The notes under the pieces: generated by a model
Databases searched by the model: none
What the model was told of the DNA's origin: nothing
Seen by the model: the letters and a program-made list of their open reading frames with translations, nothing else
NCBI GenBank assembly: GCA_977020255.1
Contig: CDROCS010005070.1
Location: forward strand, 186,001 to 250,000
Length of the DNA stretch: 64,000 bases
Direction of reading: 5' to 3'
From: Obrimoposthia wandeli
Taxonomy: Eukaryota
Shown here: piece after piece, positions 14,171 through 64,000 of the stretch
Numbering within the stretch: the stretch's first letter is position 1
Layout of the letters: each line of letters starts with the position of its first letter
Made by a program: the position numbers and the translations under genes

Positions 14171-14414
14171 ATTAAGCAAAAAGATTTTACAATGAAAAGT
14201 TATTACAACAAAATATAGAACCAATTCTAAACAAAGGTTGTGGAAATTATATATCTTTGTGACAAAAATGGAATGGGTTAGAGTCACACAGTGGTTTCAC
14301 TTCATGATAAGGAATCAATAGATTGGAAATGAATAATTTTAAGTATACTAATGTAACCATATTTATTTACATCGTTCTCTTTGTATGTATTTTGTGTATC
14401 TATACATGTTGTTT

Positions 14415-17180: not shown

Positions 17181-17310
17181 AAGTTCTAGTGTATATAGAT
17201 AAGTATGTTTAACAAATAAAATCCTTATTAAATTAGCAAAAATATAAATTTTTGCTAATTTAATAAGGATTTCATTCGTTAAACATACTTATCTATATAC
17301 ACTAGAACTT
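17181..17310. repeat. Near-perfect palindrome: 63-bp arms, 4-nt loop, 2 mismatches
   Basis: 17181-17243 is the reverse complement of 17248-17310 apart from two A/G differences. Confidence 0.9.
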
Positions 17311-43039: not shown

Positions 43040-46000
43040 ATGCAACAAAATTATGGCAGCGTTTCTCAGTTGGTCGCTGACAATTGTGTAACTGCCAATA
43101 ACTACTCGGTATTGTCTCTTCTCGACCAGGATCATCCACTCGACCTTTCTAAATGTGTCCGGAAATCTCTGGACGTAAACAACAATAGTAACATCGGTGC
43201 TGCTAGCGTCTCCCAGAATGCCAACATCAGCAATCCACTTCTGGAAGCGCCATTCGTCATGCAAAAACTCTTCGAAGAGCTCCTGAAACGCCGCACGGAC
43301 TGGCCCTCTCCCTACCCCGGGTCCAGCAACAGTGGCTTCTTCCCACCACTTCCACCGCCACCTCCGCTCGACCCGCGTCTCCAATGGACCTCTTTGTGGC
43401 ATCGACTGATGAACAGTGTCGCCCAGCAGCACTCGACACCGAACAGCAGCGGCAAACTACAGAACCCACAATTGGAGACTCGCCGTAGACCGACTTTGTC
43501 ACCGCGCTCCCTCACAAAACAGCGTCACAAGCGAACCAAGGTAACCGACTCGAGACTCTTGAAACGTGCTACAATCGGGGGTGAGGATCCTAGCATCGAT
43601 TTCAGCAGTTCGGCGCTGATCAACGAGGATGAAGACTACGAAAATCGGTCCATCCTGTCTCGGTCACCTTCGGTTAACGACTCCGAACTGGATGATGAAC
43701 CCAACAACCTCAACCATAATTCCAACATAAGCCAATCATCTTTGACTGCCGCCAGTTTGTGCTGTAATGATCCTAAGAAATATACATTAACTCCGGTACA
43801 TTTGCGCAAAGCCAAACTCATGTTCCTTTATACTCGTTATCCCAACTCCCAAATGCTGAAGAGCTTCTTTCCCGACATACTGTTTTACAAACAAAATACG
43901 GCTCAGTTAGTCAAATGGTTTAGTAATTTTAGGTAATTTTTACGTTTTATTAATTTGGAAATATTTTCAGTTCACGTAACCAATCAGAATTTGATTTAAA
44001 GGTTTTTTACTTTTTCAGAGAATTCTACTACAGTGAAATGGAAAAGGCTGTTCAAAGGTACTTATCCGGCGGTATCAAGTTCTCAACTGAACTCATTGTT
44101 ACTGAAGACAGTGAACTATTCAAAAATCTGATGACACACTTTAACAAAAATAGCCAAATTGAGGTCAGTACTGCAAAATTGCTTCAATTTTGTATCTTCT
44201 TGAGAATTTCAACCATTAAAATAGTCGAAAAATAACAGATCAGATAAAAATTTATGAAAATCCAATTTGATCTAAACAAATAAGAATTCATTTCAATTCA
44301 TTTTAATAATTCTGGCGAATGAGAGAATGTAAAATTTAGAAAATTAGCTGAAGAAATTAAAGAAATTTTTCAAAAGTTTTATTAAAATATACTATCACTA
44401 TTTTTTTAGAAATATAAAATTCAAAAAATTGATCAATTTTAACTTTTTCAAAATTTATGAATTTATAATGGCAGATATCAAGGTTTAGACGTTTTTTTAA
44501 ATAAACCGTATTTAAATATTTTAAAAAATCTGTAGTTGTCTATTTGATTTATTTTTAAATTTTGATTATCTTATAATTATTGTGGCCATTGAGAAGAAAT
44601 TTTATAGACTAAATAAAGTATAGTAAAAATCATTGTAAAAACAGGAAAAATATTGTCTTTATAACTTACATAATCCATGTTAGCAGCATGTACCATGTAG
44701 CAATGATATTCGGAATTATTTAAATAACGAACTTTAGCTTGATTTTACTTTTTTTTCAAACTTTACAATTGTGAATAAAAGTCTTAATAAAAATTAATTT
44801 AATTGAAATTGGTCATATAGATTGATCAATTTTATAAAATCAAATTTTAAACTGAAAAACTGGATATTGGGACTCTACTAGTATGCATTGTGCTAAGAAA
44901 TCGGATTATAAAGAAATGGTTACAAAGGTCTTTTGGGAATATTCTAAGAAATTTCTGATTGACATACTTCAAGTAAACAATACAATTATTTTCATTTCAA
45001 TGGTCGAAGAAAACAGTTCTGGACAATATTTTATTGTGTTTTCTCACGCTAAATTGTAGGAAATTATGTTGGTTTTCAAAGTTAATATTGTAACAAATTT
45101 CTATCCAACATTGAAAATAGTTTGAATACAGAAGATTAAATCTTAAATATAAAAAAGACTCTGTTTATTTGTTTTATATATGTCTTTGGATGTATTATGC
45201 AATGAATTTTCATATTAAACTTATAACTTATTTCAATGATTTTATTTTAAAAAATTAAACATTTATAAGAGAATAATCTGAAGTTTCATTTAATCTAACT
45301 CATATTAATTTTATAGGTTAATGATATTAAATTAGCGAATTTATGCTTAAAATTTGCTAAATACATCTATTAAAATAGAAAATCCGTAACAGAAAACGAT
45401 AAAAGGTCTAGTTTTAAGAATGATATAATTTAATTTTTTAGCTTATTTAAATATATGATTTTAAATAAGTCAAATATAATTTTTCTATTTGAAAATAAAA
45501 TTAACTATATTAAAAGTTATATTATTTGTTAAATAATAATAAAATAAATTTGAACTTTAAAATAAATAAAATGTAATTATATTATTAACTTTAGTTTTTT
45601 TATATGAAACAATTAGTATAACCTACACGAATAATAGTAGAAAATAATCTTTTCAAAATCATTTTCGTTTAAAGGTATGACAATTTAAGGACATTTAAAC
45701 AAAGATATTTTAATCTTTAAGTTTAAAATTTCTCATTTTTGCAAGTGTATAGAAATTATGAATGAAAAAATTATGCCAGCATTAATATTTAGGGGTATAA
45801 TATTTAAACTGTTAATAGATAAATTAAATTGTATCAACAAAGTTTTTTTACAACTCAACATAAACAGAATATACAGGGTATTTCTGAATAGCCACATACT
45901 TTTGTTTTAACATTATTTTAGATTTTTGTAAATAATGCTTTCTTTAATAATTTTAAGATAAATAAGTGATATATCTTATAGTATGTAGATTAATAAATAA

Positions 46001-47198
46001 AAATTAAACAATGTATTATCAATTTTCATAGTTAATTAATAATATGTAATTGGAAGCAATAAAGTAAATTATAAAAATTCATTGTAAAATACAACATTCA
46101 CTGAAAGAATAGATCAAACAATACATATAAGAAAAGGTTTGAATAAATTCGATTGTAACAAATGTATTTTCTGTCAAAAATAAAATATATTTATGGAATA
46201 AACTCAAGCTATGAGGTTGATAAAACATATAAAAACATTCTAAATCGTAACAATGTTTATTTGAACAAAATTAAGGAAAAATAATTGTATTTATTTAGCA
46301 TAAATTTTGTATTTATCTAAAAATATTGTCAATCAATTTATAATAAAATATAATTAACTTTTGTAAATGCTTTATATAATTAGAATTGATAAATGACTAA
46401 ATATATAAAAGAAGTTTTATCGTATTGAAAACTATATTATAGATAATAAAATTATATTTTTTCAAATTAAAGTTGTTATCAACACCCTTATTATAGATTA
46501 AAACAAAACTATGACATTTGCAAGATGATTTATAATTATATTTTTAAAATAAATTTCCAGGCTCAATAATTTTATATTTTACATACTTTGTGTATAAGTT
46601 TGATTTATTTGATCTGTCTTCGATTTATTTAATAGTTCATTTTTATCTTTTAATTGCAAATTAGGTACAAATTAAATATAAAATAGCAATAATCAAGATT
46701 TAATTGTTAAAATGTAATTCAAATTATTATAATTTTTATAATTAATAATAACATATTTTATTTAAAGCCTAAAATGTATAAAAACATTATAACCTTAATT
46801 TGTATTTCTGAATCCAGGTCCCAAAGGAGTTTATGATGTGTGTTCAAGTGACCCTACGTGAGTTCTATGAGGCCATTTCTGTGGGCAAGAATCTTCACCA
46901 ATCCTGGAAAAAACCTATCTACAAGAATATCGCCAAACTCGATCAACCTCTACCGGAGTTCTTTCGAGATCTGTCCTGGATGTTAGAGCTAGCTCGTGAT
47001 GACTCTAATAGTGGTAGCAACAACGGGAACAGCAACAACGGGAACAGCAACAACGGCAGTAATAACAACACCAACAACAACAATGTTTTGCTTATGGCCA
47101 GTCACCCGCATCATCATCACCACCACCAGCAACAGCAGCAGCATCAACTGCATGCTCCAGCTATGCATCCTTCCATCCTTCATCATCAGAGCTGCTAG
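43040..47198 (+). CDS. pros: Prospero/Prox homeo-prospero transcription factor; exons 43040-43932, 44019-44163, 46818-47198 (472 aa if 43040 is the start)
   Basis: [31 protein letters not shown]|[25 protein letters not shown]|[32 protein letters not shown]; GT-AG introns preserve frame (1419 nt). Upstream exons cannot be excluded. Confidence 0.95.
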
Positions 47199-52758: not shown

Positions 52759-53275
52759 TGTTGGGGTTTCTATACGAAACTTGGTATAGATCCTCTTGAG
52801 TGCGGAGGGCCCCAACGTGAGTTCGATTAGAAGCAGGTCTTAAAGTTGGTCGTGGCCTACTTAGTGTTATTATTGCCTATCTCTTGTACTATCTGAAGGT
52901 ATTTGATTAGATGTCTCTTAGTCTGAAGGGTGCAAAAACAACTTGTTCTAATGTAGGAAATTGTTTATTTGAAATTCACGTAACTAACACAACGATACGT
53001 TTATGTACGTATTTCTAAAAAGTATGATAAAATTCCTAAAGGACTTCTGTAAGTCTCTACAAGAAGTGGGGATGAACCACGTATCGATTTTACGTTCAGG
53101 TGATTAAGCTTTTAGGTTTATTCTTCTTACTTAGGTTGGTTAATCTATAACGCAACTCTCTTAAAATTCTTCGCTCCTACTTCTGATCTTTAGATAAAGT
53201 TTCTTGATCCCTTAACTCTATCTGTTGTGTGTTTGACCCCAAATTGTCCACTGTGAACAATGGGTCTCCTAAAAC

Positions 53276-53674
53276 CTAATTGTCAAGATGACAATGAAAA
53301 ACTTACTCCTAATTGTCAACTATGGACAATGAACGAGCCGAATTGTCAGCTAGGGACAATGAGTCTTACCGAATTGTCAACTAGGGACAATGAGTATTTA
53401 TCCGAATTGTCAACTAGGGACAATGAATGAACCTAATTGTCAGCTAGGGACAATGAATCTTACGGGCAAAAAGTCTGGGTATGATTCCTAATTGTCGCTG
53501 GGGACAATGAATAAATGGCTGATCTTAATTACCAACTAGGGGCAATGATTTTGTTAAAGAGTCGGAAATCCTAATTGCCAGCTAGGGGCAATGAATATGT
53601 TTAAAATATGTTAAACAACCTAATTGCCAACAAGGGGCAATGAATTTATCCTAATTGCCAACTAGGGGCAATGA
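53276..53674 (-). repeat. Array of ~11 short palindromic units (ATTGTC-N7-GACAAT / ATTGCC-N7-GGCAAT) with variable spacers, inside the LTR
   Basis: Units begin near 53276, 53309, 53339, 53370, 53403, 53432, 53487, 53525, 53571, 53619, 53651. Confidence 0.9.
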
Positions 53675-53798
53675 ACGGTTTTAGTTGGTGTTCTTACCAG
53701 TTACTGCGACTAGTGGGACGTCCGATGCAGGATCCGTAGGTCTTTCGGAATCTTCTTCGAAGCAGCGATTATTACTTGTGAGAGGTTTGAGTACACGC

Positions 53799-54220
53799 TT
53801 GAATACACTTTGACTTTGACTTTTTGGACACTTGAATACACTTTGACTTTGACTTTTTGGATACTAAACAATTATTTTTATTCACAGCAATTATTTTTAT
53901 TCACCTTGAATACACTTTGACTTTGACTTTTTGGATATTAAACAATTATTTTTATTCACAGCAATTATTTTTATTCACCTTGAATACACTTTGACTTTGA
54001 CTTTTTGGACACTAAACAATTATTTTTATTCACCTTGAATACACTTTGACTTTGACTTTTTGGACACTAAAACAATTATTTTTATTCACAGCAATTATTT
54101 TTATTCACCTTGAATACACTTTGACTTTGACTTTTTGGACACTAAACAATTATTTTTATTCACCTTGAATACACTTTGACTTTGACTTTTTGGACACTAA
54201 AACAATTATTTTTATTCACC
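53799..54220 (-). repeat. Tandem array (7 cores; units 33-75 bp) inside the LTR
   Basis: TTGAATACACTTTGACTTTGACTTTTTGGA core repeated 7 times with variable CAATTATTTTTATTCAC sub-repeats. Confidence 0.9.
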
Positions 54221-54230
54221 TGAAATCACT

Positions 54231-54331
54231 ACTTACCGAGAACTCAATTGTTCGATTTGTGGTCCAGTCGACTCTGGCTGTTGAATCCCGTATTTGTGTT
54301 TTTGAATTGAATGAACCTATCTCCTTATATA
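54231..54331 (-). promoter_or_regulatory. LTR promoter TATA box (54331-54324) and downstream 5' splice donor G|GTAAGT (54237|54236)
   Basis: TATATAAG then G|GTAAGT occur in the same order in LTR A (13376-13369; 12970) and LTR B (35771-35778; 35997). Confidence 0.65.
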
Positions 54332-55001
54332 AAGGCAGTCTTGTCAATCAAATGACAGCTGATTCGTATCGCTGGAAATTTCTTCTTACTTAAGATCTAA
54401 AAATCAATAAATCCTATTGCACTTAAAATGTGCTTACCTTGACGTCTCTTGATTGACGTGACTAATTGATTTCCTAATTTAATGGCTTCTCCTTAATTAA
54501 TCTTAACAATTGTCCTTTTTGGGTTAATTAATTTAACTTTTATACATTTTCACATTATACACGACCTTCGTGGTCCTCCTAATTTTTACCCTAAATTCCA
54601 CTAATTTTAATTCTAACTAAAATTAATATTTTAATTTAATTTTCAACCTTGTTTTCAAGGATTTTTATTTTAGTATTTAATCGACTAAATATTTAAATTT
54701 CTTAATTCTCAAACCTAACATACCTCGGGGGTTCCAAAAAAGTTACGTCCCCGGAACGTATCGATTTTACTTAATAAGCCTTTGGCTGTTGATTTTAGGT
54801 TCATCCCTACAAAATCAATCATTCAACTTCAACAAACATGCCCAAAAAATTTTCCTCAAAATCCCGGTTTTTAGTGGGAGACATAATATATAATTTGGAG
54901 CAAGTCTCAAACCATACATTATTACTTATACACAACTAAAAATTTACACACAAAATTACATGCATAACTAAGGGTTAGGAAGGAAAGAAGGGAGGAAAGG
55001 A

Positions 55002-55532
55002 TCAATTGTCATATGTCAGGTCAATTGTAATTGTCGGCTGGTTCCGACTGGCCAGGTAGCGCAGAACCTGCTCCAGGGGTAGGTCGGGAAAGGACGGACT
55101 GTCCCCGTTGTACAGGTGTAGTTGTTGGCTCCGGGTTAGGTGTGGACTCTCGATGAACAGGTCGAAATGCTGCCCGTTTATGGCGTGATTTTCTATCCAG
55201 TGCCGTCTGGCCTGGAACCACGAGTGGCAGTCTCGACTAGACCGCCATCTCTCGCGGATGCCCAGTTGTGTGTCGCGCCGGCGTGCGAGACACACGTAGC
55301 ATTGGCAATGTATGCCACCAATGCAGCTGGCAGGCGATCGGGTGCCCTTGTGCCTTCCACGGCTCTGGAGCGTCCATTTGGCAAAGGGTGTCCGGCACAG
55401 TGGACATGTGATATGGCCGGGGGGTCGAGCCTTGGTCCACAAATAGAGGCACTCCTCGTGGAATTTGTGACGGCAGCCGACAGGGGATGCTGATACCGCC
55501 CAAATCTTCTCCATGCATACAGAACACTTCAT
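55002..55532 (-). CDS. RING-H2 protein 3 with extra Cys motif and C-terminal extension (176 aa from MKCSVC)
   Basis: CSVC..CRHKFHEEC..W..CPLC, then CIGGIHCQCYVC; acceptor TTTTCTTATGCAG directly before the ATG. Confidence 0.85.
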   Translation of the reverse strand: MKCSVCMEKIWAVSASPVGCRHKFHEECLYLWTKARPPGHITCPLCRTPFAKWTLQSRGRHKGTRSPASCIGGIHCQCYVCLARRRDTQLGIRERWRSSRDCHSWFQARRHWIENHAINGQHFDLFIESPHLTRSQQLHLYNGDSPSFPDLPLEQVLRYLASRNQPTITIDLTYDN

Positions 55533-55872
55533 CTGCATAAGAAAACAACTCCTTTCAATTTGGGGTTCACTGTTCTCATTGTTAATTTAAATTTTATTTC
55601 AAAACGAATCCTTAGTTATCTAATCCTACCGAGTTTTGTTTCGATTTTAGGCATGTTTACGCATTCACACTAAGCATAAAAATTGTCTTTTTTAGAAATT
55701 CAGTATAATAATTACAATTTCAGTTAAACATCATACATAAAAATGGTAATGGTCAATTTACAGTTCACAAGATTATATAATTATGATTACAATTATGGTA
55801 GCTAATTTATCGCGGTATGCGATACACAGGGTAGTTCATGATATCACGTTCAAGTCAGAAAGTTACCTTCGA

Positions 55873-56178
55873 TTATTGTTGGGGATTGGGCTGGCCTGTG
55901 CTTCGCTCCTCCACGCAGAACGAGCACCAGCAATCGCAGATGGTTTTCCAGCAGTGTACGATGGGTACCACTGCTTGGAGGCTGTCCTGGTTGTACACGT
56001 AGTGTACTGAGAAGGTCGCTCTGCACATCGGGCAGGTTGGGAAGTCGAGGGGATTGTTGCTGTTTGCGATGGGGATCCACGTCTCGAGGCATTCGACGTG
56101 GAAAAGGTGGTCGCAGTTGTTGGGCTTGGTGTAGAAGTCCACGATGCTCTCGTAGCAGATGGAACATTCTCCAGACAT
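55873..56178 (-). CDS. RING-H2 protein 2 (101 aa)
   Basis: CSIC..CDHLFHVEC..W..CPMC, then CWKTICDCWCSFC. Confidence 0.9.
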   Translation of the reverse strand: MSGECSICYESIVDFYTKPNNCDHLFHVECLETWIPIANSNNPLDFPTCPMCRATFSVHYVYNQDSLQAVVPIVHCWKTICDCWCSFCVEERSTGQPNPQQ

Positions 56179-56238
56179 TACTGTGGGAGGGTTGATGTTG
56201 AATTTGGGCTCGATTGAGGACTGGTGGTTGTGTGATGT

Positions 56239-56538
56239 TTACACAAAAGTGGTCTGATTTTGTCGATCTGACAAACAGTAATAACACCAACACTCTCCGA
56301 AATTCTTCCAACAGAATACCACCTGTACATATACATCCTCTTGGTTGGGTTCTAACATGATGAATCTTGCGAATTGTCTTCTGCATACAGGGCAACAAGG
56401 GTATGTTGGATGTCCGAACTGTCCATAAGTTCTGATCCATGTCGATAAACATTCCTCGTGGTGTAAATGGCTGCAGGTTTCGGGTCTTGTTCTTCGTTCG
56501 GTTAGATCTTCCAAACATATTGGGCATTCTTCGGACAT
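56239..56538 (-). CDS. RING-H2 protein 1 (99 aa from MSEECPIC)
   Basis: CPIC..CSHLHHEEC..W..CPVC, then CWKNFGECWCYYC. Confidence 0.9.
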   Translation of the reverse strand: MSEECPICLEDLTERRTRPETCSHLHHEECLSTWIRTYGQFGHPTYPCCPVCRRQFARFIMLEPNQEDVYVQVVFCWKNFGECWCYYCLSDRQNQTTFV

Positions 56539-56661
56539 TCTAAATACATGATGATGATTAATTTCTACATGAGTTTTATATATTTCTACTATTTGTACAA
56601 TCACTTCTAGATATTTCTAAACATTTCACACACTAATTTATCTACAACCTCCTCTGACTCA

Positions 56662-57711
56662 TCATATCTTGATGGGAGGCGGAGGTAAGGGTCGCAATTC
56701 CACTTCCTCCATGATGGGTGTGTCACAGCATCGCAATCTTTCGCATTTTCGTCGTATTCCTGGGCATACTTGACTGCCTTTTACGCACACGATTGTCAAT
56801 AGAACCACTGCTGTTGACACTACGGCCATTCCAATTAGGGCATTGACCGCTGTTATTCCGCTGTCTGATGATTTATAATCATACTTCATTTTGTTGTTTG
56901 TCGGTTCGAATGACATTTCCATGGGTTTTGATCGGTTTCCATGTATTATGTCCGATTTTCTAAAAATTCGGGGATTTGGGTGTTTTGTTTCTGATGGAAC
57001 AGGTATTATTATTTTGGATTGGAAATGATGTTTGGGATCTAGTGGGATCGTTCCCCTCACTCTTGTCCTCTTAATAATTGTACTTTGGTTTCTGGGATTG
57101 AGCTCTTTTTCTTTCGCTTCTGTCTTTGTTCTGATCACTGTCGGTTTTTTGGAATGTCGTTTACTTTCGTTTACTTTTGCCTTCTTTCTGACTAGGATTG
57201 GCCTTTTGGGAATGATTTTCCTGGGTTTGATACTTATACCGGATCTACGAAATCGACGGTTCTGGTATCTTAGAGTTATGTAGAATATTTCACCTGTTAT
57301 TATCATGATTATGGTCGAGGTCTCTGTAGTATTACTGGAAATTCGATTACACAGACATTCTGTGTTAAAATGTGGTACTAACATTTGGCTTTGGATTTCG
57401 AATCTGATTCCGCCATCTGGGTTGGGACACATTACTGTTACTCTGTCGGTCTCTAGCAATCTGAAAAATATCCTAACGGAATTCCATACGGCTTTACGTC
57501 GTCTACCTGTGATCATAATCCTGTCGACAATTTTCCAGATGCGTTCATCTCTAGGCAATATTAATGACTTTGTTCGGATACTTTGGATAATCCGCTTCCT
57601 CTTCGATATTGTTATCCGTAGGTATAACACTTTTTCATGATACAATAATATTAAATTGTAATCGGGTGTATTTTGGTCGATTTTTATTCTGACCTGTCGG
57701 ATGACATACAA
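56662..57711 (-). CDS. Basic ectodomain + C-terminal TM + Cys/Pro-rich tail; probably the C-terminal part of the preceding ORF
   Basis: 349-aa open frame, open upstream to ~57780; sequons NTT/NES/NQS/NRS; RFRR; TM ITAVNALIGMAVVSTAVVLLTIVCV; tail CC..PLPPPP. Confidence 0.75.
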   Translation of the reverse strand: MYVIRQVRIKIDQNTPDYNLILLYHEKVLYLRITISKRKRIIQSIRTKSLILPRDERIWKIVDRIMITGRRRKAVWNSVRIFFRLLETDRVTVMCPNPDGGIRFEIQSQMLVPHFNTECLCNRISSNTTETSTIIMIITGEIFYITLRYQNRRFRRSGISIKPRKIIPKRPILVRKKAKVNESKRHSKKPTVIRTKTEAKEKELNPRNQSTIIKRTRVRGTIPLDPKHHFQSKIIIPVPSETKHPNPRIFRKSDIIHGNRSKPMEMSFEPTNNKMKYDYKSSDSGITAVNALIGMAVVSTAVVLLTIVCVKGSQVCPGIRRKCERLRCCDTPIMEEVELRPLPPPPIKI

Positions 57712-57772
57712 TTTCTGATCGATATTGTCGGTTGCTGACGTCTGTAGATGAATGTCTACTACGTGATTTGTT

Positions 57773-60700
57773 TTAGAAGGGGGTTTCTATGTATACTGCC
57801 CGTATTACGTCTTGTCTCCATTTACTGATCATGATCTCATAACTAGCCTTGGTAGTGGTGATTTGTATGATCAGCATGATTCCTATGATCGTTCGATTCC
57901 TAAACTCAGGAACTTCAATGAAACAAGTCAAATTACTCATATAGTACGGTCTTTCCTCGATATGTTCATATATCGTTGGCTGGTACTCTGGTGCTGGTTC
58001 ATCTAGAAATGGTGGTCTTGGTATAATTGTGTTGAATTTTTGTAAGTTCATTTGACCTGTTCGTCTTGCGAGATCATGACGTTTCTTTTTTGATCTCGAC
58101 TCTATCTTTGTACAACAAAACAAGATGAGTAATATTAATATTATAAATCCAATGATCAGTGCGAGTATTGGATTAATCAATTCTAGAATACCGTAACGTA
58201 CTGCTGGTATTCCTTTACTCTTGATGGTTAATATTTTAAATTTGTGTGCACTTTGGTTGGATATGTCACTGAGAAGTACTATTTTAGTTTGTCCAAATGT
58301 GTAGTCTTCACATGTGACAACATCAATTCCATAATGTCTATTAAGTGTTTTCATTTCGGTCGCTGGAACTATACATATCCGTCCTGGGCATCCTTTTACA
58401 CACATGATCATTACAGCTTTACTGTAGGATGTCTTGATTATTTCTAGGGTGTTGTCTAGATTTCTCAAATGTAAATTATATTCGGATAGTGTCATCAATT
58501 CGGCTTTACTGGTTGGCATGGCTTGCAGTACCAATCCAATTACTACTCCATAAATCAATCCTTGTGCAACGGTGCACAGGGCCTTGACTGACCTTTTGCA
58601 AAGGGTTTTAATTATCAATCGTTTAAGAGATATCTGTTTCTGATTGGATCGTTTTGTTGTCTGTCGTTGTTTTGACATCTCCTCGATTCCATCTCTTCCG
58701 ATAATCAACTGTACCGGTTTACCTTGTATCGTCAACTTTCCCAATCCATTTTTGGCGGACAAGCATGTTTTATGTCCTTCCATCGTTTCAATTATTACTC
58801 TCTTACTTCCATACTCACGTGTTTTGATGACATCGCCGTCGAATATATACGTTGGTCCTTTTGTATCAGCATCTTTTTGTATTTCCTTTACAACTCGTTT
58901 TCTTCGCTTGCATCCGGCGAATGTTGTTGATATTCGGTCAAGTGTGCGCTGTCGGTCAGCTTCGTAATCTATTCGAAATTGATTCAGTATTCTGTTTTGT
59001 GGGTAAAATATCGCTTCATTTACTATGTTGTCCTCGATCCTTTCGTCTAGATACACAAGCACTTTGTTCGTTGGTCCATTTGGTCTTTTCATCTTTACAA
59101 ACTGAAATCTTTTACTGTCGGTTCTCATAGATCGAAGACATTTTCGGATGATCCACACATCAATTAGTCCTAACAACACTAATAGCATCATCAGTGCCGG
59201 CGTATGGTACTGTATGGTGTAGTTGTGGATATCGATGAACCAGGAACTATTTCCGTGGTTGGAGCCTATCTCCTGTGCTCCCGTTATCGGCATTAAACAA
59301 CTTAACAAGCCTATCGCTAGCAATCTTTGGTATTGAAAGCTGGGCACTGTTGTTGTAGCTTCATTTGTTTCTCGTTGTTGTTTCCTCTTTTCGGTGTATT
59401 TCTCTATTTCTCGAACGAGTAACGGTTTGAATTCCGTATTCGGTCTATTCTGTTTGATGTAGACCATCGCTTCTTCTGGCGTGTGACCATGGTACTCTAC
59501 CAACAAGGATACACCTATGGTAGGCGCTAACATTGTACCTTTTTTCTGATATATCAGAACGCCGTTTCCTTCTGTGACTTCAGCTTGGATGGTTTGAGTC
59601 AATTTCGTCAGATGTTGTTGTGCATCGTTTATTTCTCGATTGGAAGCATGTATGTATCGAGTGGTGTCGTCTTCAGTATTTTGACACAGACTAATTATCT
59701 CGTTTCCGACTTCAACAATGTTGATTACTCGGTTGATACTGTGGAACTTTAATCCAGCAGTATCTATATCTCCTGGATGACATAAAAATACTTTTGGCAT
59801 TATCTGTGTAATTTTGTCGACTCCGGCTAAGAATAACCCGGTCAACGATAATGCTTGGAGGAAATTCTTTTCCTTTGGGTCCTCAGGAATGTCGTCCATC
59901 CGTCTTTGTTCTTGCAACAGAAGTTGGTAATTTGCCAACTGTCCCAAAAAATTAAGATTTGGGTTTGCAATACTTCTTCTCTCCTGTAGGTATTTTAGCG
60001 CTTCTAGTACCTGCATTCGTCTAGTCTTTATTAGGTATGCTAATACTAGAGTTGCTGATCGAGAAATTCCTTTCTGACAATGTACCAACACTTTTCCTTG
60101 GTTCCGGAGTTCTCTGTGAAGTATTTCGTTTGTTTCTACGAACCATTCGAGAAGATTAGCGTCCATTGAGTCTTTTACTCTTAATGTCATAGCTCTGATC
60201 GTCTGATATTGTGATTTGTGATTCATTGTAACGTTGATCACGTATGTTATCCCTTGTTCCAACAGTTTCTTTTCATCTGTTGCATCCTCCACATTTCCGA
60301 GGTATAACTTACCTGGAATGATCTCACTCATTGGTGGCATTAATTCTGACTCTTCAAGTTTTAGTCTTTCTAATCTCTTCTCTATTTGTTCGTCGATGTT
60401 GGATAGTTTCGCCAGTTTCTTTCCTCTCAGCATTCGTATTGCTGGAGAGATATTCATCTTTGTCTCTGATGTCTGTTCCTTTGTTGAGTCTTCTTCCGAC
60501 TCGGTCTCCTCTGCAGATTTAATTCGTCTTTCTTGTATATTCTGTTTCACGAATTCTATGTTTTGTCTTTTTCTGCTCTCTTTAGCGAATTCAATCTCCA
60601 TGGTTCTTCCGAATCGCTCTATTATGTTATCTTCGGATTCTGTTGATTCTGTATCGTTACTCTCCGGTTCGCTGTCTTCACTAGACTCGCTCGAAGGGTA

Positions 60701-61687
60701 TTCTGGTATGTCTGTCTGGACTGAAATTAATGAAGGGGTTAGAATAATTGGATTGATTTCCCCTTCGTATTTGTGAATCGGATACGGTATTACACTATCT
60801 TTAAGTATTTCAACTTGGAACTGTGCTCCATAGCACATGACAATTGTTTCTAATTTACCCATGATGGACAATCCATCAAAATAGGTAACATTCAGCTTAG
60901 ATATCGGTGTCTTCGCATAATTAATTAAGTTTACTCGTATCTCAGTTGATGACGGCCATCGATTTTTTAGTAAAATTATAATTTCGTCGTTTATCGATGT
61001 GATCACACTTGGCGCGGATGATACTATTTCAGCATGATATTTTGGCTGGATTGAGTTGGTCACTTGTTCTCGGATCATATTGATTCTTAGTGGTTTTTTA
61101 TTTTTAGCTTCCCACTTCCGGTATCCGCTGTCAATGCGTAACTCTGCCGTTGCTTTGATGATTTTATTGTTAGCCACTTCCGGTTGGGTCGGCGAATGAA
61201 ATCCTTCTATTACGCTCAACCTTACAGATACTTCCGTTTGATCTGTATCTAACCGGTGAGATTCTGGTATACAACATACAATTGTCTTTCCGTCAAAGTA
61301 TTTGGTGTCCATCTGACAAATTATCTTTTCAGTGTCAGCGTCGATTAAATGGACTCTCATGATATCTCTTTTCCCATGTGAATTACGTAATACCATTATT
61401 ACATCGTGGTATTCTTGTTTGAGTCTTTTTGGTGTACCATGCAGTATGTGACCACCGGCCGGTTCCTTCTCTTCCTGACTGGCTAGTCCTGCTTCAGTAC
61501 TGTCATAGTTCTGCCATGCAACTATGTTTGGTGTCAATGTGATTTCGATTATCACTTTCTCAGTCGTAAACACATTGGAATTTTGATAAAGTGCTGCGAC
61601 TAATGTATTTCCGTCGTAGTATGACACTCTAAGTTCGCACAGAAATTCGTTTGTCAGTGCATCTTTCACAATGACTTCTTTAGCCAC
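57773..61687 (-). CDS. 1304-aa cargo ORF: Ig/IPT-like repeats, dual-specificity phosphatase, pseudophosphatase, multiple signal/TM segments
   Basis: YFDG/YYDG repeats; SEIIPGKLYLGN..D..VLVHCQKGISRSATLVLAYLI..NPNLNFLGQL (DSP); second DSP-like fold with VLIYQKKGTMLA. The called start is a GTG, and the frame overlaps the integrase end. Confidence 0.88.
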   Translation of the reverse strand: MAKEVIVKDALTNEFLCELRVSYYDGNTLVAALYQNSNVFTTEKVIIEITLTPNIVAWQNYDSTEAGLASQEEKEPAGGHILHGTPKRLKQEYHDVIMVLRNSHGKRDIMRVHLIDADTEKIICQMDTKYFDGKTIVCCIPESHRLDTDQTEVSVRLSVIEGFHSPTQPEVANNKIIKATAELRIDSGYRKWEAKNKKPLRINMIREQVTNSIQPKYHAEIVSSAPSVITSINDEIIILLKNRWPSSTEIRVNLINYAKTPISKLNVTYFDGLSIMGKLETIVMCYGAQFQVEILKDSVIPYPIHKYEGEINPIILTPSLISVQTDIPEYPSSESSEDSEPESNDTESTESEDNIIERFGRTMEIEFAKESRKRQNIEFVKQNIQERRIKSAEETESEEDSTKEQTSETKMNISPAIRMLRGKKLAKLSNIDEQIEKRLERLKLEESELMPPMSEIIPGKLYLGNVEDATDEKKLLEQGITYVINVTMNHKSQYQTIRAMTLRVKDSMDANLLEWFVETNEILHRELRNQGKVLVHCQKGISRSATLVLAYLIKTRRMQVLEALKYLQERRSIANPNLNFLGQLANYQLLLQEQRRMDDIPEDPKEKNFLQALSLTGLFLAGVDKITQIMPKVFLCHPGDIDTAGLKFHSINRVINIVEVGNEIISLCQNTEDDTTRYIHASNREINDAQQHLTKLTQTIQAEVTEGNGVLIYQKKGTMLAPTIGVSLLVEYHGHTPEEAMVYIKQNRPNTEFKPLLVREIEKYTEKRKQQRETNEATTTVPSFQYQRLLAIGLLSCLMPITGAQEIGSNHGNSSWFIDIHNYTIQYHTPALMMLLVLLGLIDVWIIRKCLRSMRTDSKRFQFVKMKRPNGPTNKVLVYLDERIEDNIVNEAIFYPQNRILNQFRIDYEADRQRTLDRISTTFAGCKRRKRVVKEIQKDADTKGPTYIFDGDVIKTREYGSKRVIIETMEGHKTCLSAKNGLGKLTIQGKPVQLIIGRDGIEEMSKQRQTTKRSNQKQISLKRLIIKTLCKRSVKALCTVAQGLIYGVVIGLVLQAMPTSKAELMTLSEYNLHLRNLDNTLEIIKTSYSKAVMIMCVKGCPGRICIVPATEMKTLNRHYGIDVVTCEDYTFGQTKIVLLSDISNQSAHKFKILTIKSKGIPAVRYGILELINPILALIIGFIILILLILFCCTKIESRSKKKRHDLARRTGQMNLQKFNTIIPRPPFLDEPAPEYQPTIYEHIEERPYYMSNLTCFIEVPEFRNRTIIGIMLIIQITTTKASYEIMISKWRQDVIRAVYIETPF

Positions 61688-63057
61688 ATCTGTCGGTTGT
61701 GTTTTTCGAAAACAACTATTATCTCTTCGTCTTCTTCTAATATCTCTTGTGGTGCGATGTGTCGGATTACTTCCTTTTCCTCTTGGTACTTCATTCTGAG
61801 CATACCAATTCTCGCTGGTTTTTCCTTGCTACCACTCGTCATCATGTTTATGTAGTTCCGATCACTTACCATTCGTGTAAGTTTAATGGTATTGGTATTC
61901 GATTTCGATTTCTGTGATCTTAACTCATATCGTGACGCATTATCTTTATTTGGTACTAATTTGCATCGATTTGCATGTACAATCATCGGTTCCTTGTTCC
62001 GATTCTCTTCGTTGATTACTTTCAAATTTGTTGAGGTTGTCTGGATCACCTTGTATGGTCCTTTGTATGGTCTATGAAGTTTAAACGATAGACCTGGTTC
62101 GATGACTGGATAAAATATCATCACTTGATCTCCGACTCTAAATTCATGTGGTTTTGCTTTTTTGTCGTATTGTTCCTTGTAACCTTCTTGATTGAATTTC
62201 AACTTCAATCCGGCTTTGGTCCAAGCATCTTGTAACCTTTCCTTCATAACGACAATGTATTGTTCAGTTTCTAGATACTGAGATGTTGGCTCGGTCCACT
62301 CCAGATCCATTGGCATATTGTTCTGTCTGAGATACATCAGATAGAATGGTGTGTGACCCGTCGCCTCTCGAACTGAATTCCTGTAAGCATATAAACATGA
62401 AGGTAAATATTTATCCCAATCCTCTTGCTTGTCGGAGCAATAGGATTGTACCATCATACATAAAGTTTTATTAAACCTTTCTACCAGACCATCTGTCTGT
62501 GGGTGATATGGTGAAGTTTGCAACTTCATGATTCCGAATATCTTCGATACTGCTTTTATGACTTCTCCAGTGAAGTTCTTACCTTGATCTGTTAACAACT
62601 TTCTAGGCACTCCGTATCGAAATATTATCTCTTCCACTAAGATTTGCGCTATTGTTTCAGCTTTCTGGTTCTGCATGGGATATGCTTCTACCCATCTCGT
62701 CATGTAGTCCGTAAATACTATGACGTACTTGTTTCCTTTACTTGATTCTCTCAATGGTCCCAATATATCCATCGCTGTGAATTCCATTGGTGCCAAGGGA
62801 ACTGGCATTGGTTTCAGTGGAACTTTAGTACGAGTTCCGGTGTCTTTTCTGGTTAAACATACTTTACATTGTTTACACCATTGTTTTATGTCGTCTTCCA
62901 TACCATCCCAATGGTACTTCTCTTTGATTCTGGCTATTGTCTTTCGCCCTGACAGATGTCCTCCTAGTGTTCCGTCGTGATACTGGATCATCACTGCTGT
63001 TTTCAATGACTTCGGAATTACTACTACTATCTTTCCGACATTATTGACAATATACAA
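61666..63057 (-). CDS. Gypsy integrase (HHCC, DDE, GPY/F) with a C-terminal extension; frameshifted from RNase H
   Basis: HDGTLGGH..CKQC, AMDILG, LTDQG, DGLVERFNKTL, PYKGPYKV. Confidence 0.95.
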   Translation of the reverse strand: MYIVNNVGKIVVVIPKSLKTAVMIQYHDGTLGGHLSGRKTIARIKEKYHWDGMEDDIKQWCKQCKVCLTRKDTGTRTKVPLKPMPVPLAPMEFTAMDILGPLRESSKGNKYVIVFTDYMTRWVEAYPMQNQKAETIAQILVEEIIFRYGVPRKLLTDQGKNFTGEVIKAVSKIFGIMKLQTSPYHPQTDGLVERFNKTLCMMVQSYCSDKQEDWDKYLPSCLYAYRNSVREATGHTPFYLMYLRQNNMPMDLEWTEPTSQYLETEQYIVVMKERLQDAWTKAGLKLKFNQEGYKEQYDKKAKPHEFRVGDQVMIFYPVIEPGLSFKLHRPYKGPYKVIQTTSTNLKVINEENRNKEPMIVHANRCKLVPNKDNASRYELRSQKSKSNTNTIKLTRMVSDRNYINMMTSGSKEKPARIGMLRMKYQEEKEVIRHIAPQEILEEDEEIIVVFEKHNRQMWLKKSL

Positions 63058-63068
63058 GATTCCTTCTT

Positions 63069-64000
63069 TTATCGAGTATTTTTCGTCATTTCATCGTTTA
63101 GATCTCCTTTCACCAACAATTCTTTGATTAGACTCAGTTCTTCATCTTCTGTCTGTTCTTTGATGATTTCTTTGTCTATTTTACCCGTCTTTAGCAAAAT
63201 CGTCAGTAGATTTGCTTCTCCTTTTTGGTCATTGGCTCCATCTTCTTCTGGAATTATGTTTCCTTTTTCATCTACATTTGTCAATCTCGATAAACAATCT
63301 GCGTTGCCATTCGACTTTCCGGTTCTATAACGGATTTCTAGATCGAATTCGGCCAATTTTAGAAACCATCTGTTTAATCTACTCATCTCATCTCTATGTT
63401 TATATAAGAACTGTAGTGGTTTGTGATCTGTATACAGGAATACTTTTTGTCCTAGCAAATAGTGTCTGTACTGTCTACATGAATACACTATGGCTAGACA
63501 TTCCTTTTCGATAACAGAGTATCCTCTTTCGGCTCTGTTTAATCCTCTACTTGCATACTCAATGACGTGTTCTCTTCCTTCGTCATCCTCTTGTCCCAAT
63601 ACTGCTCCTACAGCATAGTTACTTGCATCTGTCATGAGTATGAACTGTCGGTTTATATCTGGAAACGCTAATATCGGTGTTTTTATCAATCTTTCTTTTA
63701 AATGCTCGAACGCTTGTTGGGCTTCTTCTCCCCATATGAACTTCTCATCTTTTCTCGTCAACTTTCTCAATGGTGTTGCTATATCTGAAAAATGTTCAAC
63801 AAATCGTCTATAATAATTCGCAAGACCTAAAAAACTCTGTATCTCCTTAACAGTCTTTGGTGCTAAATGCGCTTTTACTTTCTCGATCTTTGCCGGATCA
63901 GGTCGAATGCCTTCTTTCGATACTATATGTCCTAAAAATGTTACTCGCTCTTTAGCCCATTCGCATTTTGTAGGTTTAACTTTTAATTTAGCGTTTTCCA
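63069..64000 (-). CDS. Gypsy Pol: RT C-terminus/connection and RNase H (5' truncated by window)
   Basis: Open frame from the window end: KCEWAKERVTFLGHIVSKEGIRPDP..SFLGLANYYRRFV..TDASNYAVGAVL..EKECLAIV..YTDHKPL..NADCLSR. Confidence 0.96.
   Translation of the reverse strand, partial: ENAKLKVKPTKCEWAKERVTFLGHIVSKEGIRPDPAKIEKVKAHLAPKTVKEIQSFLGLANYYRRFVEHFSDIATPLRKLTRKDEKFIWGEEAQQAFEHLKERLIKTPILAFPDINRQFILMTDASNYAVGAVLGQEDDEGREHVIEYASRGLNRAERGYSVIEKECLAIVYSCRQYRHYLLGQKVFLYTDHKPLQFLYKHRDEMSRLNRWFLKLAEFDLEIRYRTGKSNGNADCLSRLTNVDEKGNIIPEEDGANDQKGEANLLTILLKTGKIDKEIIKEQTEDEELSLIKELLVKGDLNDEMTKNTR

What the first reader, a model, noticed from the sequence alone, without database searches (positions are those of the whole stretch)
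55002..64000. Gypsy retrotransposon carrying a virus-like host-modulation cassette
Between integrase and the 3' LTR lie ~6.7 kb of co-oriented ORFs: Ig/IPT-like repeats, a phosphatase, a pseudophosphatase, three membrane proteins and three RING-H2 ligase-like genes. From memory, extra ORFs in LTR elements are known (env; exonuclease or esterase ORFs in bdelloid rotifers; giant planarian elements), but I do not recall this combination. Phosphatases and RING E3s are classic immune/signalling effectors of large DNA viruses (e.g. vaccinia VH1, herpesviral RING proteins). The inference is an invertebrate complex-retrovirus-like element that manipulates host signalling and ubiquitination.
Basis: partly seen in the sequence, partly recalled or inferred. 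Interest (0 to 1): 0.95.

Follow-up and report, generated by a model that had tools for sequence, protein, structure and literature searches.

The report
Gypsy retroelement with phosphatase and RING cargo
The window ends in the 3' half of a Gypsy-type retrovirus-like element whose polymerase gene runs on into a MAP-kinase-phosphatase-like enzyme and is followed by three small RING ubiquitin-ligase-like genes. This is a new cargo set, but giant flatworm Gypsy elements with host-meddling domains are already a known kind.

Summary
The features are real. On the minus strand, RNase H and integrase of a Ty3/Gypsy element are followed by about 6.7 kb of co-oriented coding sequence. This holds three internal all-beta repeats, a DUSP10/MKP-like phosphatase with an intact active site, a dead phosphatase-like domain, hydrophobic segments, a basic membrane-anchored ORF and three paralogous RING-H2 genes.

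The long cargo ORF belongs to the element. It overlaps the integrase frame, its first repeat unit appears to begin in that frame, and it shares the element's A-rich composition.

Not shown: a 3' LTR, a second copy, the fold of the repeats, or any activity. RING2 and RING3 have host-like codon composition and an intron-like spacer between them, so their place inside the mobile unit is less sure. The pol-plus-extension frame has two frame changes in the visible part.

Cargo outside the phosphatase and RING domains has no detectable relative. Two related metagenome elements also carry multi-gene post-integrase cargo with a RING gene. The closest relative seen 5' of pol has the in-frame env-protease fusion described for planarian Burro/GYPSM1 elements. 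These already carry RING, BIR, BCL2 and MATH domains and were proposed to meddle with host ubiquitination and apoptosis.

Verdict: a new variant of a known kind, of moderate interest.

The parts
57773..64000 (-). pol (end of RT, RNase H, integrase) together with its roughly 1300-codon extension, given as one broken gene that runs off the window at 64000. It has two frame changes and no internal stop in the visible part.
   Evidence: Relatives L002 and L005 have RNase H and integrase in one frame.
63345..63734 (-). RNase H domain of pol
   Evidence: Pfam RT_RNaseH 4e-39 and RT_RNaseH_2 8e-37. It is 50-56% identical to L001, L002, L003 and L005.
61960..63018 (-). Integrase: H2C2 zinc-binding domain, catalytic core and C-terminal SH3-like part
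   Evidence: Pfam Integrase_H2C2 7e-19, rve 7e-13, Integrase_p58_C 3e-3. Nearest relatives are 47-58% identical.
60713..61687 (-). Three internal repeats of about 90-140 residues, predicted all-beta, fold unknown, with an acidic serine-rich linker after them
   Evidence: Shuffle tests z = 10.4, 7.2 and 2.9. No Pfam family. AlphaFold pLDDT 33.
59924..60307 (-). Dual-specificity phosphatase domain, MKP/DUSP10-like, with catalytic Asp and HCxxGxxRS present
   Evidence: Pfam DSPc 3e-35 on the segment. PDB DUSP10 2e-23. Alignment. Named relatives.
59405..59788 (-). Second, degenerate phosphatase-like domain without catalytic Cys or Arg (pseudophosphatase)
   Evidence: Pfam DSPc 1.5e-6, 28.5 bits, below the 33.5-bit cut-off. 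Alignment.
58112..59203 (-). Part of the long ORF with three strongly hydrophobic 19-residue segments (membrane-spanning by hydropathy), Cys-rich loop between the last two, and a cytoplasmic-type tail after them
   Evidence: Hydropathy scan. No Pfam family and no relative.
56662..57711 (-). ORF-B: very basic protein with one C-terminal hydrophobic anchor and no relatives
   Evidence: Same A-rich composition as pol.
56239..56538 (-). RING1, a 99-residue RING-H2 protein with a second four-Cys motif and element-like composition
55873..56178 (-). RING2, a 101-residue RING-H2 paralogue with host-like GC3 of 0.75. A splice-acceptor-like site lies 2 nt before its ATG.
55533..55867 (-). AT-rich (GC 0.29) spacer with GT..AG ends, intron-like
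55002..55538 (-). RING3, a 178-residue RING-H2 paralogue with a C-terminal extension and GC3 of 0.63
52900..55001 (-). Non-coding tail, a candidate 3' UTR plus LTR; the far end is uncertain. It holds a TATA-like box near 54335, tandem 55/75/130-nt repeats that each carry AATAAA (53798-54254), and about twelve copies of a 30-nt palindromic motif (53240-53700).
   Evidence: Unique within the window. Its LTR status is not demonstrable.

Best explanation
This is the 3' half of an endogenous Ty3/Gypsy (Metaviridae) retrovirus-like element lying on the minus strand. It belongs to a lineage whose nearest relatives fuse a mononegavirus-type fusion glycoprotein in frame to the protease, which is the Burro-like or GAG-ENV-POL type.

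Shown:
- The pol reading frame does not end with integrase. It continues, across one frame change in this copy, into about 1300 codons. These encode three beta-rich repeats, an acidic coiled linker, a catalytically intact MKP-type dual-specificity phosphatase derived from a cellular DUSP10-like gene, a dead phosphatase-like domain, and a multi-pass membrane part.
- A basic tail-anchored ORF and three small paralogous RING-H2 genes follow.

Inferred:
- The phosphatase is made as part of the Gag-Pol-type polyprotein, released by the element's protease, and present in particles or at the site of reverse transcription and integration.
- There it dephosphorylates host stress and immune MAP kinases of the JNK/p38 type, which blunts the apoptotic or antiviral signalling that replication would trigger. 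The dead domain serves as a substrate-docking or regulatory partner.
- The RING-H2 proteins are made from spliced sub-genomic messages. They recruit host E2 enzymes to ubiquitinate host restriction or signalling factors.
- RING1 is an old resident, and RING2 and RING3 are later acquisitions from host genes.
For: - Domain identities and intact catalytic or ligand residues.
- Physical continuity with pol: the cargo frame opens 160 nt before the integrase stop and has no ATG in its first 144 codons. The integrase-frame tail matches the head of repeat units 2 and 3 (combined shuffle p = 0.008), while the overlapping cargo-frame stretch does not (p = 0.24-0.44).
- Composition: RT/RNase H, integrase, all three thirds of the cargo ORF, ORF-B and RING1 share A = 0.34-0.40, GC3 = 0.30-0.40 and A3 = 0.39-0.47. 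Together with only 44-48% identity to the nearest cellular phosphatases, this indicates long residence in the element.
- Long-term selection on the RINGs: the paralogues are only 30-38% identical, yet all 8 zinc ligands, a Trp and four extra Cys are invariant.
- Recurrence in relatives. In L006 (integrase 58% identical) the integrase ORF continues into a signal-peptide-plus-membrane-anchor protein, followed by a 445-residue RING ORF and a 717-residue orphan ORF. L010 (35% identical) has a 660-residue post-integrase extension, two deoxynucleoside-kinase ORFs and a RING-H2 ORF. The cargo in both has pol-like composition. A RING pattern occurs in no other ORF of the 85 loci held at that point (L001-L085).
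- L001 (48-55% identical) has fusion glycoprotein, protease, RT and RNase H in one ORF, the Burro hallmark (PMC6431247).
- Acceptor-like sites in the top 5% of 893 AG sites sit 0-2 nt before the RING2 and RING3 start codons.
Against: - There is one partial copy only. No LTR pair, target-site duplication, gag, protease or env is visible, and no second copy lies in the window.
- The pol-plus-extension frame has two frame changes, with no slippery heptamer at either. This copy is therefore defective or mis-assembled.
- RING2 and RING3 have host-like GC3 and an intron-like spacer. They could be host genes next to a truncated element.
- The cargo outside the phosphatase and RING domains has no relative among 1.84 billion representative proteins (top 150 listed), in the 5.8-billion word index, or in IMG/VR and JGI contigs. 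The family cannot be shown to be multi-copy or conserved.
- The MKP-type kinase-binding (rhodanese) domain is absent.
- Membrane segments inside a pol extension are hard to reconcile with a simple cytosolic polyprotein.
- Every functional step is inference.
Confidence: 0.55

Rival explanations
1. Chimeric locus. The element proper ends after ORF-B or RING1 and is 3'-truncated. RING2, the intron-like spacer, RING3 and the tail are ordinary host genomic DNA, a small host RING-H2 gene pair, so only part of the 'cassette' is mobile.
For: - GC3 is 0.75 and 0.63 for RING2 and RING3, against 0.30-0.40 for everything upstream and 0.56-0.57 for the host prospero exons.
- A 335-nt AT-rich GT..AG spacer gives an exon/intron contrast like host genes.
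- The AT skew of the element fades near 56.6 kb.
- No LTR can be shown.
Against: - RING1, with element-like composition, is the closest paralogue of RING2 (38%). It lies only 60 nt upstream in the same frame, with no LTR or other boundary between them. A chance landing of a RING-carrying element directly beside a paralogous host RING gene is very unlikely.
- Relatives L006 and L010 also end their cargo with a RING gene.
Confidence: 0.2
2. Passenger junk. The post-integrase sequence is host-derived material picked up by template switching, as in many plant LTR elements. It is carried passively by a dead copy and does nothing for the element.
For: - Only a single copy is seen.
- The pol frame is broken twice.
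- No relatives of the cargo were found.
Against: - Captured fragments are usually partial and decay. Here a 1351-codon frame has no stop, and the catalytic loop is intact.
- The composition is fully adjusted to that of pol.
- The RING ligands are conserved across deep paralogy.
- Analogous cargo occurs in two relatives.
Confidence: 0.12
3. Domesticated gene. A host gene derived from a Gypsy pol, fused to a phosphatase, is now used by the host like other integrase-derived genes. It is not a mobile element.
For: - It is single-copy as far as can be seen.
- The ORFs are long and open.
Against: - RT/RNase H is still attached.
- There are two frame changes.
- The strong A-rich retroelement composition is unlike the host exons.
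- The tail carries tandem repeats typical of element ends.
Confidence: 0.05
4. Endogenous fragment of a large DNA virus (phosphatase plus RING genes) that happens to abut a Gypsy remnant.
For: Phosphatases and RING proteins are common in baculoviruses, iridoviruses, poxviruses and herpesviruses (established knowledge). Fold matches of the RING model to such proteins exist, but all are weaker than E = 0.001.
Against: - No DNA-virus hallmark gene is present.
- The phosphatase is nearest to cellular DUSP10.
- The cargo frame overlaps and continues the integrase frame.
- The composition is identical to that of pol.
Confidence: 0.02

Closest known systems
Burro / GYPSM1 giant Gypsy-like elements of planarians (Jurka 2007; Grohme et al. 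2018; reviewed in PMC6431247)
   Same: Both are Gypsy-type pol with a polyprotein swollen by host-derived regulatory domains that bear on ubiquitination and cell death. In Burro these are AIR1/RING, MATH-TRAF, SUMO-like, BIR and BCL2-like, plus accessory ORFs and tandem repeats. The same host-meddling hypothesis has already been voiced for Burro. The window element's relative L001 has env fused in frame to protease, as in Burro. The AT-rich host (31.6% GC) is compatible with a flatworm.
   Different: In Burro the extra domains lie between gag and env, upstream of pol. Here they lie downstream of integrase. No phosphatase is reported for Burro. The three RINGs here are separate small genes. No sequence comparison with Burro was possible, because no Burro sequence was at hand, and the host is unidentified.
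Bdelloid rotifer Vesta/Juno LTR elements with enzymatic ORF3 (PMC5408684)
   Same: These animal Gypsy-like elements carry a post-pol ORF3 encoding captured enzymes (GDSL esterase, DEDDy exonuclease) or small membrane or coiled-coil proteins, expressed from spliced messages.
   Different: They carry one ORF3 rather than a multi-gene block, with different enzymes and no phosphatase or RING (zero mentions).
Env-carrying Gypsy elements (errantiviruses, including GAG-ENV-POL forms in Nematoda, Bryozoa and Platyhelminthes; PMC13524379)
   Same: The pol relatives L001 and L086 carry the Monjiviricetes-type fusion glycoprotein. The GAG-ENV-POL order leaves the post-integrase region free.
   Different: No env-family domain is detectable in the visible part of this element. 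The cargo is signalling and ubiquitin enzymes, not an entry protein.
Complex retroviruses with accessory genes expressed from spliced mRNAs (established knowledge)
   Same: Several small ORFs lie 3' of pol, acceptor-like sites sit directly before two of them, and codon composition differs between structural and accessory genes.
   Different: This is not Retroviridae by pol type, splicing is unproven, and the accessory proteins are unrelated.
Virus-encoded dual-specificity phosphatases (vaccinia VH1, baculovirus PTP) and viral RING E3s
   Same: The general logic is the same: a mobile genome carries a host-signalling phosphatase and E3-like proteins.
   Different: No specific relationship was found. 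The best phosphatase matches are cellular DUSP10, DUSP4, DUSP1 and DUSP2, and no viral phosphatase is among the best 60 of 75 PDB matches. RING matches are generic, at E of 3e-3 or weaker in the viral fold library.
Orchid Ty3/Gypsy elements with an acquired m6A demethylase domain (PMC9289625, seen)
   Same: A host enzyme domain became fixed inside a Ty3/Gypsy element.
   Different: The host is a plant, there is a single domain, and the enzyme is different. Only the abstract was read.

Membership tests
Ty3/Gypsy (Metaviridae) LTR retroelement | pol with RT, RNase H and integrase in that order, of the Gypsy type | tested here: met
   RT_RNaseH and then Integrase_H2C2 plus rve lie in that order on the minus strand. 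Only the last residues of RT are inside the window. Relatives L001 and L005 show protease, RT, RNase H and integrase in order.
Ty3/Gypsy (Metaviridae) LTR retroelement | Two long terminal repeats flanked by a target-site duplication, with a primer-binding site and a polypurine tract | tested here: inconclusive
   The 5' half lies outside the window. No repeat of the tail occurs in the window, and no convincing polypurine tract is seen after the last ORF.
Ty3/Gypsy (Metaviridae) LTR retroelement | gag and protease | not testable with these tools
   They would lie beyond base 64000.
Burro-like giant Gypsy elements | env in frame between gag and pol | not testable with these tools
   This region is outside the window. 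The feature is met in relative L001 (Monjiviricetes_fusion 1e-76, directly followed by protease).
Burro-like giant Gypsy elements | Polyprotein enlarged by host-derived regulatory domains | tested here: met
   The pol frame continues into repeats, a phosphatase and a pseudophosphatase.
Burro-like giant Gypsy elements | pol sequence clusters with Burro/GYPSM1, and the host is a dugesiid planarian | not tested
   No Burro sequence or host identification was available. Only the AT-richness (31.6% GC) is compatible.
MAP kinase phosphatases (MKP subgroup of dual-specificity phosphatases) | Catalytic HCx5R loop and general-acid Asp | tested here: met
   Alignment with DUSP10 orthologues. DSPc 9e-40.
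MAP kinase phosphatases (MKP subgroup of dual-specificity phosphatases) | N-terminal rhodanese-like MAP-kinase-binding domain | tested here: not met
   No rhodanese domain was found in Pfam scans of the ORF. It therefore works like, and derives from, an MKP catalytic domain but is not a canonical MKP.
MAP kinase phosphatases (MKP subgroup of dual-specificity phosphatases) | Closest relatives are MKPs | tested here: met
   Best PDB hits are DUSP10, DUSP4, DUSP1, DUSP2 and DUSP16. Best named database hits are DUSP10 of Lingula, sharks and fishes.
RING-H2 E3 ubiquitin ligases | C3H2C3 zinc-ligand pattern with correct spacing | tested here: met
   The ligands are invariant in all three paralogues. 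zf-RING_2 scores above its cut-off in all three. The RING core of the model has pLDDT 70-86.
RING-H2 E3 ubiquitin ligases | E2 binding and ligase activity | not testable with these tools
   Only the conserved Trp and Pro of the E2-facing surface can be noted.
Env-carrying Gypsy elements (errantivirus-like) | A recognisable fusion glycoprotein gene | tested here: not met
   No env family was found in any visible ORF, even at E = 10. One could still lie upstream of pol, outside the window.
Complex retrovirus-like expression | Accessory ORFs served by splice acceptors joined to a leader donor | tested here: inconclusive
   Acceptor-like sites ranked 21 and 40 of 893 lie 0-2 nt before the RING2 and RING3 ATGs, and a weaker one lies before RING1. 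The score is heuristic and there are no transcript data.

The most novel reading that the evidence does not exclude
This would be a lineage of invertebrate (possibly flatworm) Gypsy-type endogenous retroviruses that behaves like a complex retrovirus. It delivers a Pol-linked, particle-borne MAP-kinase phosphatase into the cell. It also expresses a changing set of small RING E3 ligases, partly renewed from host genes, from spliced messages. Sister elements would carry other enzyme cargo such as deoxynucleoside kinases.
Probability: 0.2. Interest if true: 0.8.

Novelty: new variant of a known kind. Interest (0 to 1): 0.55.

Why it matters
Retroelements of animals are usually thought of as gag-pol(-env) machines. 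Elements that carry working host-signalling enzymes blur the line between transposon and complex virus.

A phosphatase fused to integrase and a small family of RING genes would be the first such cargo reported for an LTR element in the literature I could search. Together with L006 and L010, it suggests that post-integrase 'accessory gene' blocks with a RING gene are a recurring and still undescribed feature of one branch of Gypsy elements.

If confirmed in multiple copies, this would give a tractable comparative system for how retroelements acquire and renew counter-defence genes. The concept itself, Gypsy elements tinkering with ubiquitination and apoptosis, was already proposed for planarian Burro elements. 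The gain is therefore in breadth and detail, not in kind.

Tried and rejected
Searches that found nothing:
- Word-index protein search with the whole cargo ORF: no hit.
- Exact look-up of ten window ORFs: none is in the collection, so the host genome is not held.
- Exhaustive HMMER search with cargo residues 1-1200: 19,104 hits, but all of the top 150 match through the phosphatase domain. Weaker relatives of the other parts could be hidden below them.
- Profile search with the three RINGs: nothing.
- IMG/VR and JGI contig scans with the cargo: nothing.
- Rfam and tRNA scans of the window: nothing.
They did surface the Burro review.

Models and local tests that did not help:
- AlphaFold on the N-terminal repeats as a single sequence: unusable.
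- The RING model with three sequences: only the core is confident, and its matches in the viral fold library are generic.
- Canonical -1 slippery sites at the two pol frame junctions: none. Programmed frameshifting is therefore not supported, and mutation or homopolymer assembly error cannot be told apart.
- The reading of the C-terminal membrane part as a class I Env (hydrophobic peptide, helical stretch, Cys loop, anchor): left as speculation. The putative surface part is basic, poor in Cys and nearly without glycosylation sites.

Other dead ends:
- TARA scaffolds L087 and L088 and most JGI loci showed only ordinary or tandem elements.
- Host identification failed, because no protein search was left for the prospero gene.

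2. From these, the places of the frame changes can be narrowed. My reasoning also mentioned an approximate place once.
I stopped doing both. This report gives counts only, and nothing was deleted.

Full report
**What is there**

The window is 31.6% GC. It carries a metazoan prospero homeobox gene on the plus strand: Homeo-prospero domain 5e-22 and 3e-13 in two exons, 43040-43936 and 46833-47198. The finding lies tail to tail with this gene, on the minus strand.

Reading 5' to 3' on that strand:
- The end of RT and an RNase H domain (Pfam RT_RNaseH 4e-39).
- An integrase (Integrase_H2C2 7e-19, rve 7e-13, weak Integrase_p58_C).
- A 1351-codon open frame whose first 160 nt overlap the end of the integrase frame.
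- A 374-codon open frame, ORF-B.
- Three small ORFs that each give zf-RING_2 above its cut-off.

After the last stop codon at 55002, no ORF with any family match occurs for more than 7 kb. GC falls from 0.47 to 0.30. The element runs off the window at 64000, so gag, protease, most of RT and the 5' LTR are not available.

**The long ORF**

It begins with three internal repeats of roughly 90-140 residues. Pairwise local alignments exceed shuffles by z = 10.4, 7.2 and 2.9. No Pfam family matches them even at E = 10. A single-sequence AlphaFold model is unusable (pLDDT 33), though predicted all-beta. 'Ig/IPT-like' therefore remains a guess.

After an acidic Ser/Glu-rich linker comes a dual-specificity phosphatase domain (DSPc 3e-35 on the segment).
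- Its best solved relatives are the catalytic domains of DUSP10/MKP-5, DUSP4, DUSP1, DUSP2 and DUSP16 (E = 2e-23 and weaker).
- Its best named database relatives are DUSP10 orthologues of a brachiopod, sharks and fishes at 44-46% identity, and an unnamed Logan protein at 48%.
- The general-acid Asp and the HCxxGxxRS loop are present.

A second domain, 18% identical to the first, still matches DSPc weakly (1.5e-6, below the cut-off). It has lost the catalytic Cys and Arg, so it is a pseudophosphatase. The MKP-type rhodanese docking domain is absent.

The last 500 residues contain a signal-peptide-like stretch and three strongly hydrophobic segments. They have no detectable relative.

**ORF-B and the RINGs**

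ORF-B is extremely basic, ends in one hydrophobic anchor and matches nothing. An open frame of that length in this composition is not a chance event: about 5e-11 from the base frequencies.

RING1 (99 residues), RING2 (101) and RING3 (178) are paralogues, 38%, 30% and 33% identical over about 95 residues. All eight RING-H2 ligands, a Trp and a Pro of the E2-facing surface, and four further Cys in a second motif are invariant. That is the signature of long purifying selection.

A profile of the three finds only generic cellular RING-H2 domains in the PDB: EL5, RNF126, AMFR, RNF38 and synoviolin, at E = 2e-5 and weaker. It finds nothing in the word-indexed protein collection. A model of RING2 has a confident core (pLDDT 70-86). 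Against predicted viral structures it gives only generic RING matches, none at E of 0.001 or better.

**Is the cargo part of the element?**

For the long ORF the answer is yes, on three independent grounds.
1. The cargo frame opens inside the integrase ORF and has no ATG for its first 144 codons.
2. The first repeat unit is incomplete in the cargo frame. The missing head is matched by the tail of the integrase-frame translation (combined shuffle p = 0.008). The overlapping stretch of the cargo frame itself does not match (p = 0.24 and 0.44). The pieces were compared apart and never joined. Integrase and cargo are, or were, one reading frame.
3. RT/RNase H, integrase, each third of the cargo ORF, ORF-B and RING1 share one unusual composition: A = 0.34-0.40, GC3 = 0.30-0.40, A at third positions 0.39-0.47. 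This is unlike the host exons, which have GC3 of 0.56-0.57.

A phosphatase only 44-48% identical to any cellular one, and fully adjusted to the element's composition, has lived in this lineage for a long time.

**The weak point: RING2 and RING3**

Their GC3 is 0.75 and 0.63, which is host-like. Between them lies a 335-nt stretch with 0.29 GC. It starts with a donor-like AG|GTAAC six bases after the RING2 stop and ends in a pyrimidine tract plus CAG exactly at an ATG of RING3. That is how host genes in this genome look.

Against the idea that they are simply host DNA, RING1 is RING2's closest paralogue. It lies 60 nt upstream in the same frame, with no boundary between them. I read RING2 and RING3 as later acquisitions from host genes, but I put one chance in five on the chimeric-locus alternative.

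Acceptor-like sites ranked 21 and 40 among 893 AG sites lie 0-2 nt before the RING2 and RING3 start codons. By my rough estimate, about 5e-4 by chance for two of three. This would fit expression from spliced sub-genomic messages, but equally fits host exons.

**State of this copy**

In the visible part, the pol-plus-extension reading frame is interrupted by two frame changes and by no stop codon. In relatives the corresponding parts of pol are continuous. A third frame change may separate the long ORF from ORF-B, but whether those were ever joined cannot be told.

Neither of the two sure junctions has a canonical -1 slippery heptamer, and homopolymer runs occur in each overlap. Mutation and long-read assembly error cannot be distinguished.

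No LTR can be shown. The tail (about 52.9-55.0 kb) is non-coding and unique in the window. It contains a TATA-like box, tandem 55/75/130-nt repeats that each carry AATAAA, and about twelve copies of a 30-nt palindromic motif. This is compatible with, but no proof of, a long LTR.

**Relatives**

None of the window's ORFs is in the 15-billion-protein collection. The cargo has no relative outside its phosphatase domain in an exhaustive HMMER search of 1.84 billion representatives; the top 150 were listed, all through the phosphatase. It has none in IMG/VR or JGI contigs either.

The integrase does have relatives, at 47-58% identity on short metagenome contigs.

- **L001.** It encodes a Monjiviricetes-type fusion glycoprotein (1e-76) fused in frame to protease, RT and RNase H.
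- **L006.** Its integrase is 58% identical. The integrase ORF continues into a protein with a signal peptide and a membrane anchor. A 445-residue RING-finger ORF (zf-RING_UBOX 3.5e-7) and a 717-residue orphan ORF follow.
- **L010.** Its integrase is 35% identical. A gag-pol ORF carries a 660-residue post-integrase extension, followed by two deoxynucleoside-kinase ORFs (6e-41 and 1e-20) and a RING-H2 ORF (5e-7).

In both L006 and L010 the cargo has pol-like composition. A RING ligand pattern occurs in no other ORF of the 85 loci held at that point (L001-L085). Apart from weak RING similarity, the cargos share no sequence. Most other loci show ordinary elements, tandem elements or a downstream env.

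A variable multi-gene block after integrase that includes a RING gene is therefore a recurring trait of this part of the Gypsy tree. This supports the view that the window's cassette belongs to the element.

**Comparison with what is known**

The review by Arkhipova and Yushenova (PMC6431247) describes the giant Gypsy-like Burro/GYPSM1 elements of planarians. Their polyprotein holds gag, AIR1 (RING), Smc, MATH-TRAF, SUMO-like, BCL2-like, BIR and ankyrin motifs. It also holds an env with hits to mononegavirus fusion glycoproteins, lying in frame between gag and pol, 'the first case' of that arrangement, together with accessory ORFs. The authors already suggest that Burro meddles with host apoptosis and ubiquitination.

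A 2026 survey finds GAG-ENV-POL Gypsy elements in Nematoda, Bryozoa and Platyhelminthes (PMC13524379). L001 shows just this in-frame env-protease arrangement. The window element therefore most likely belongs to a Burro-like or GAG-ENV-POL lineage, and the AT-rich host is compatible with a flatworm. Neither point could be tested directly.

Rotifer Gypsy-like elements carry enzymatic ORF3s (esterase, exonuclease) expressed from spliced messages (PMC5408684). Neither these papers nor nine full-text searches mention a phosphatase, a set of RING-H2 genes or a deoxynucleoside kinase in an LTR element. The comparison with vaccinia VH1 or herpesviral RING proteins is one of logic only, because no specific relationship came back from any search.

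**How it most likely works**

Shown: the domain identities, the intact catalytic and zinc-binding residues, the linkage to pol, the compositional history and the recurrence in relatives.

Inferred:
- The phosphatase is produced as the C-terminal part of the Pol polyprotein, so it accompanies the replication machinery.
- As a derivative of a JNK/p38-directed MKP, it lowers stress-kinase signalling that would otherwise lead to apoptosis or antiviral responses.
- The dead domain serves docking or regulation, as pseudophosphatases often do.
- The RING-H2 proteins bind host E2 enzymes and direct ubiquitination of host factors, and they are renewed from host genes over time.

I give this 0.55. The main rivals are a chimeric locus for RING2 and RING3 (0.2), passive junk (0.12), a domesticated gene (0.05) and a DNA-virus fragment (0.02).

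**Verdict**

The element is a new variant of a known kind: Gypsy-type endogenous retroviruses with host-derived regulatory cargo. It is documented here by one partial and probably defective copy. Interest is 0.55.

From these, the places of the frame changes can be narrowed, and my reasoning once mentioned an approximate place.

Noticed in passing
L010:2324-11410: A JGI metagenome contig (Ga0209372_1000657) holds a Gypsy gag-pol ORF with a 660-residue post-integrase extension. Two deoxynucleoside-kinase ORFs (Pfam dNK 6e-41 and 1e-20) and a RING-H2 ORF follow, all in pol-like composition. I found no description of kinase cargo in LTR elements in the literature held.
   Followed up: partly
L006:2-5873: The closest relative with downstream sequence (integrase 58% identical; Ga0073919_1000310). 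Its integrase ORF continues into a protein with a signal peptide and a membrane anchor, followed by a 445-residue C3HC4 RING ORF and a 717-residue ORF with no family or PDB match.
   Followed up: partly
L001:40-3795: A Monjiviricetes-type fusion glycoprotein domain (1e-76) is fused in frame directly to protease, RT and RNase H. This is the arrangement reported as a hallmark of planarian Burro elements. An in-frame stop separates RNase H from integrase.
   Followed up: partly
L003:984-2636: In this relative (integrase 53% identical) a retropepsin-like domain lies after integrase in the same ORF. It is unexplained and could be a tandem element, a rearrangement or a captured second protease.
   Followed up: no
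L014:5456-5995: An ankyrin-repeat ORF lies 3.6 kb downstream of a Gypsy integrase (35% identical), at the contig end. It could be cargo (Burro carries ankyrin repeats) or a host gene.
   Followed up: no
window 53240-54254: Downstream of RING3 lie about twelve copies of a 30-nt palindromic motif (period 30-49 nt) and a nested 55/75/130-nt tandem array at 97-98% identity in which each unit carries AATAAA. These are possible LTR enhancer or polyadenylation modules.
   Followed up: partly
window 43040-47198 (+): A host prospero-type homeobox gene, with Homeo-prospero domain split over two exons and long Asn, His and Gln runs. It lies tail to tail with the element and is the only host marker seen. 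The species was not identified.
   Followed up: partly
window 9367-12082 and 33720-34995 (+): Two sets of ORF fragments match organellar/viral type-B DNA polymerase (PF03175, weak). These are probably decayed Maverick/Polinton-like elements. Short repeats link the two regions (25492-25616/38071-38195 and 12320-12385/37042-37107).
   Followed up: no
window 40311-40982 (+): A Tc1/mariner-type DDE transposase remnant (DDE_3, 1.5e-6).
   Followed up: no
window 17181-17310 and 13514-14222: A near-perfect palindrome with 63-nt arms 4 nt apart, and an A-rich tandem array (274-nt units plus shorter sub-repeats).
   Followed up: no
window 56239-56538 / 55873-56178 / 55002-55538: After removal of the intron-like spacer, all three RING ORFs would lie in one reading frame separated only by single stop codons. 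The same stop-separated, same-frame layout is seen between pol and the first kinase ORF in L010. It is unexplained and could be a relic of duplication or readthrough.
   Followed up: no
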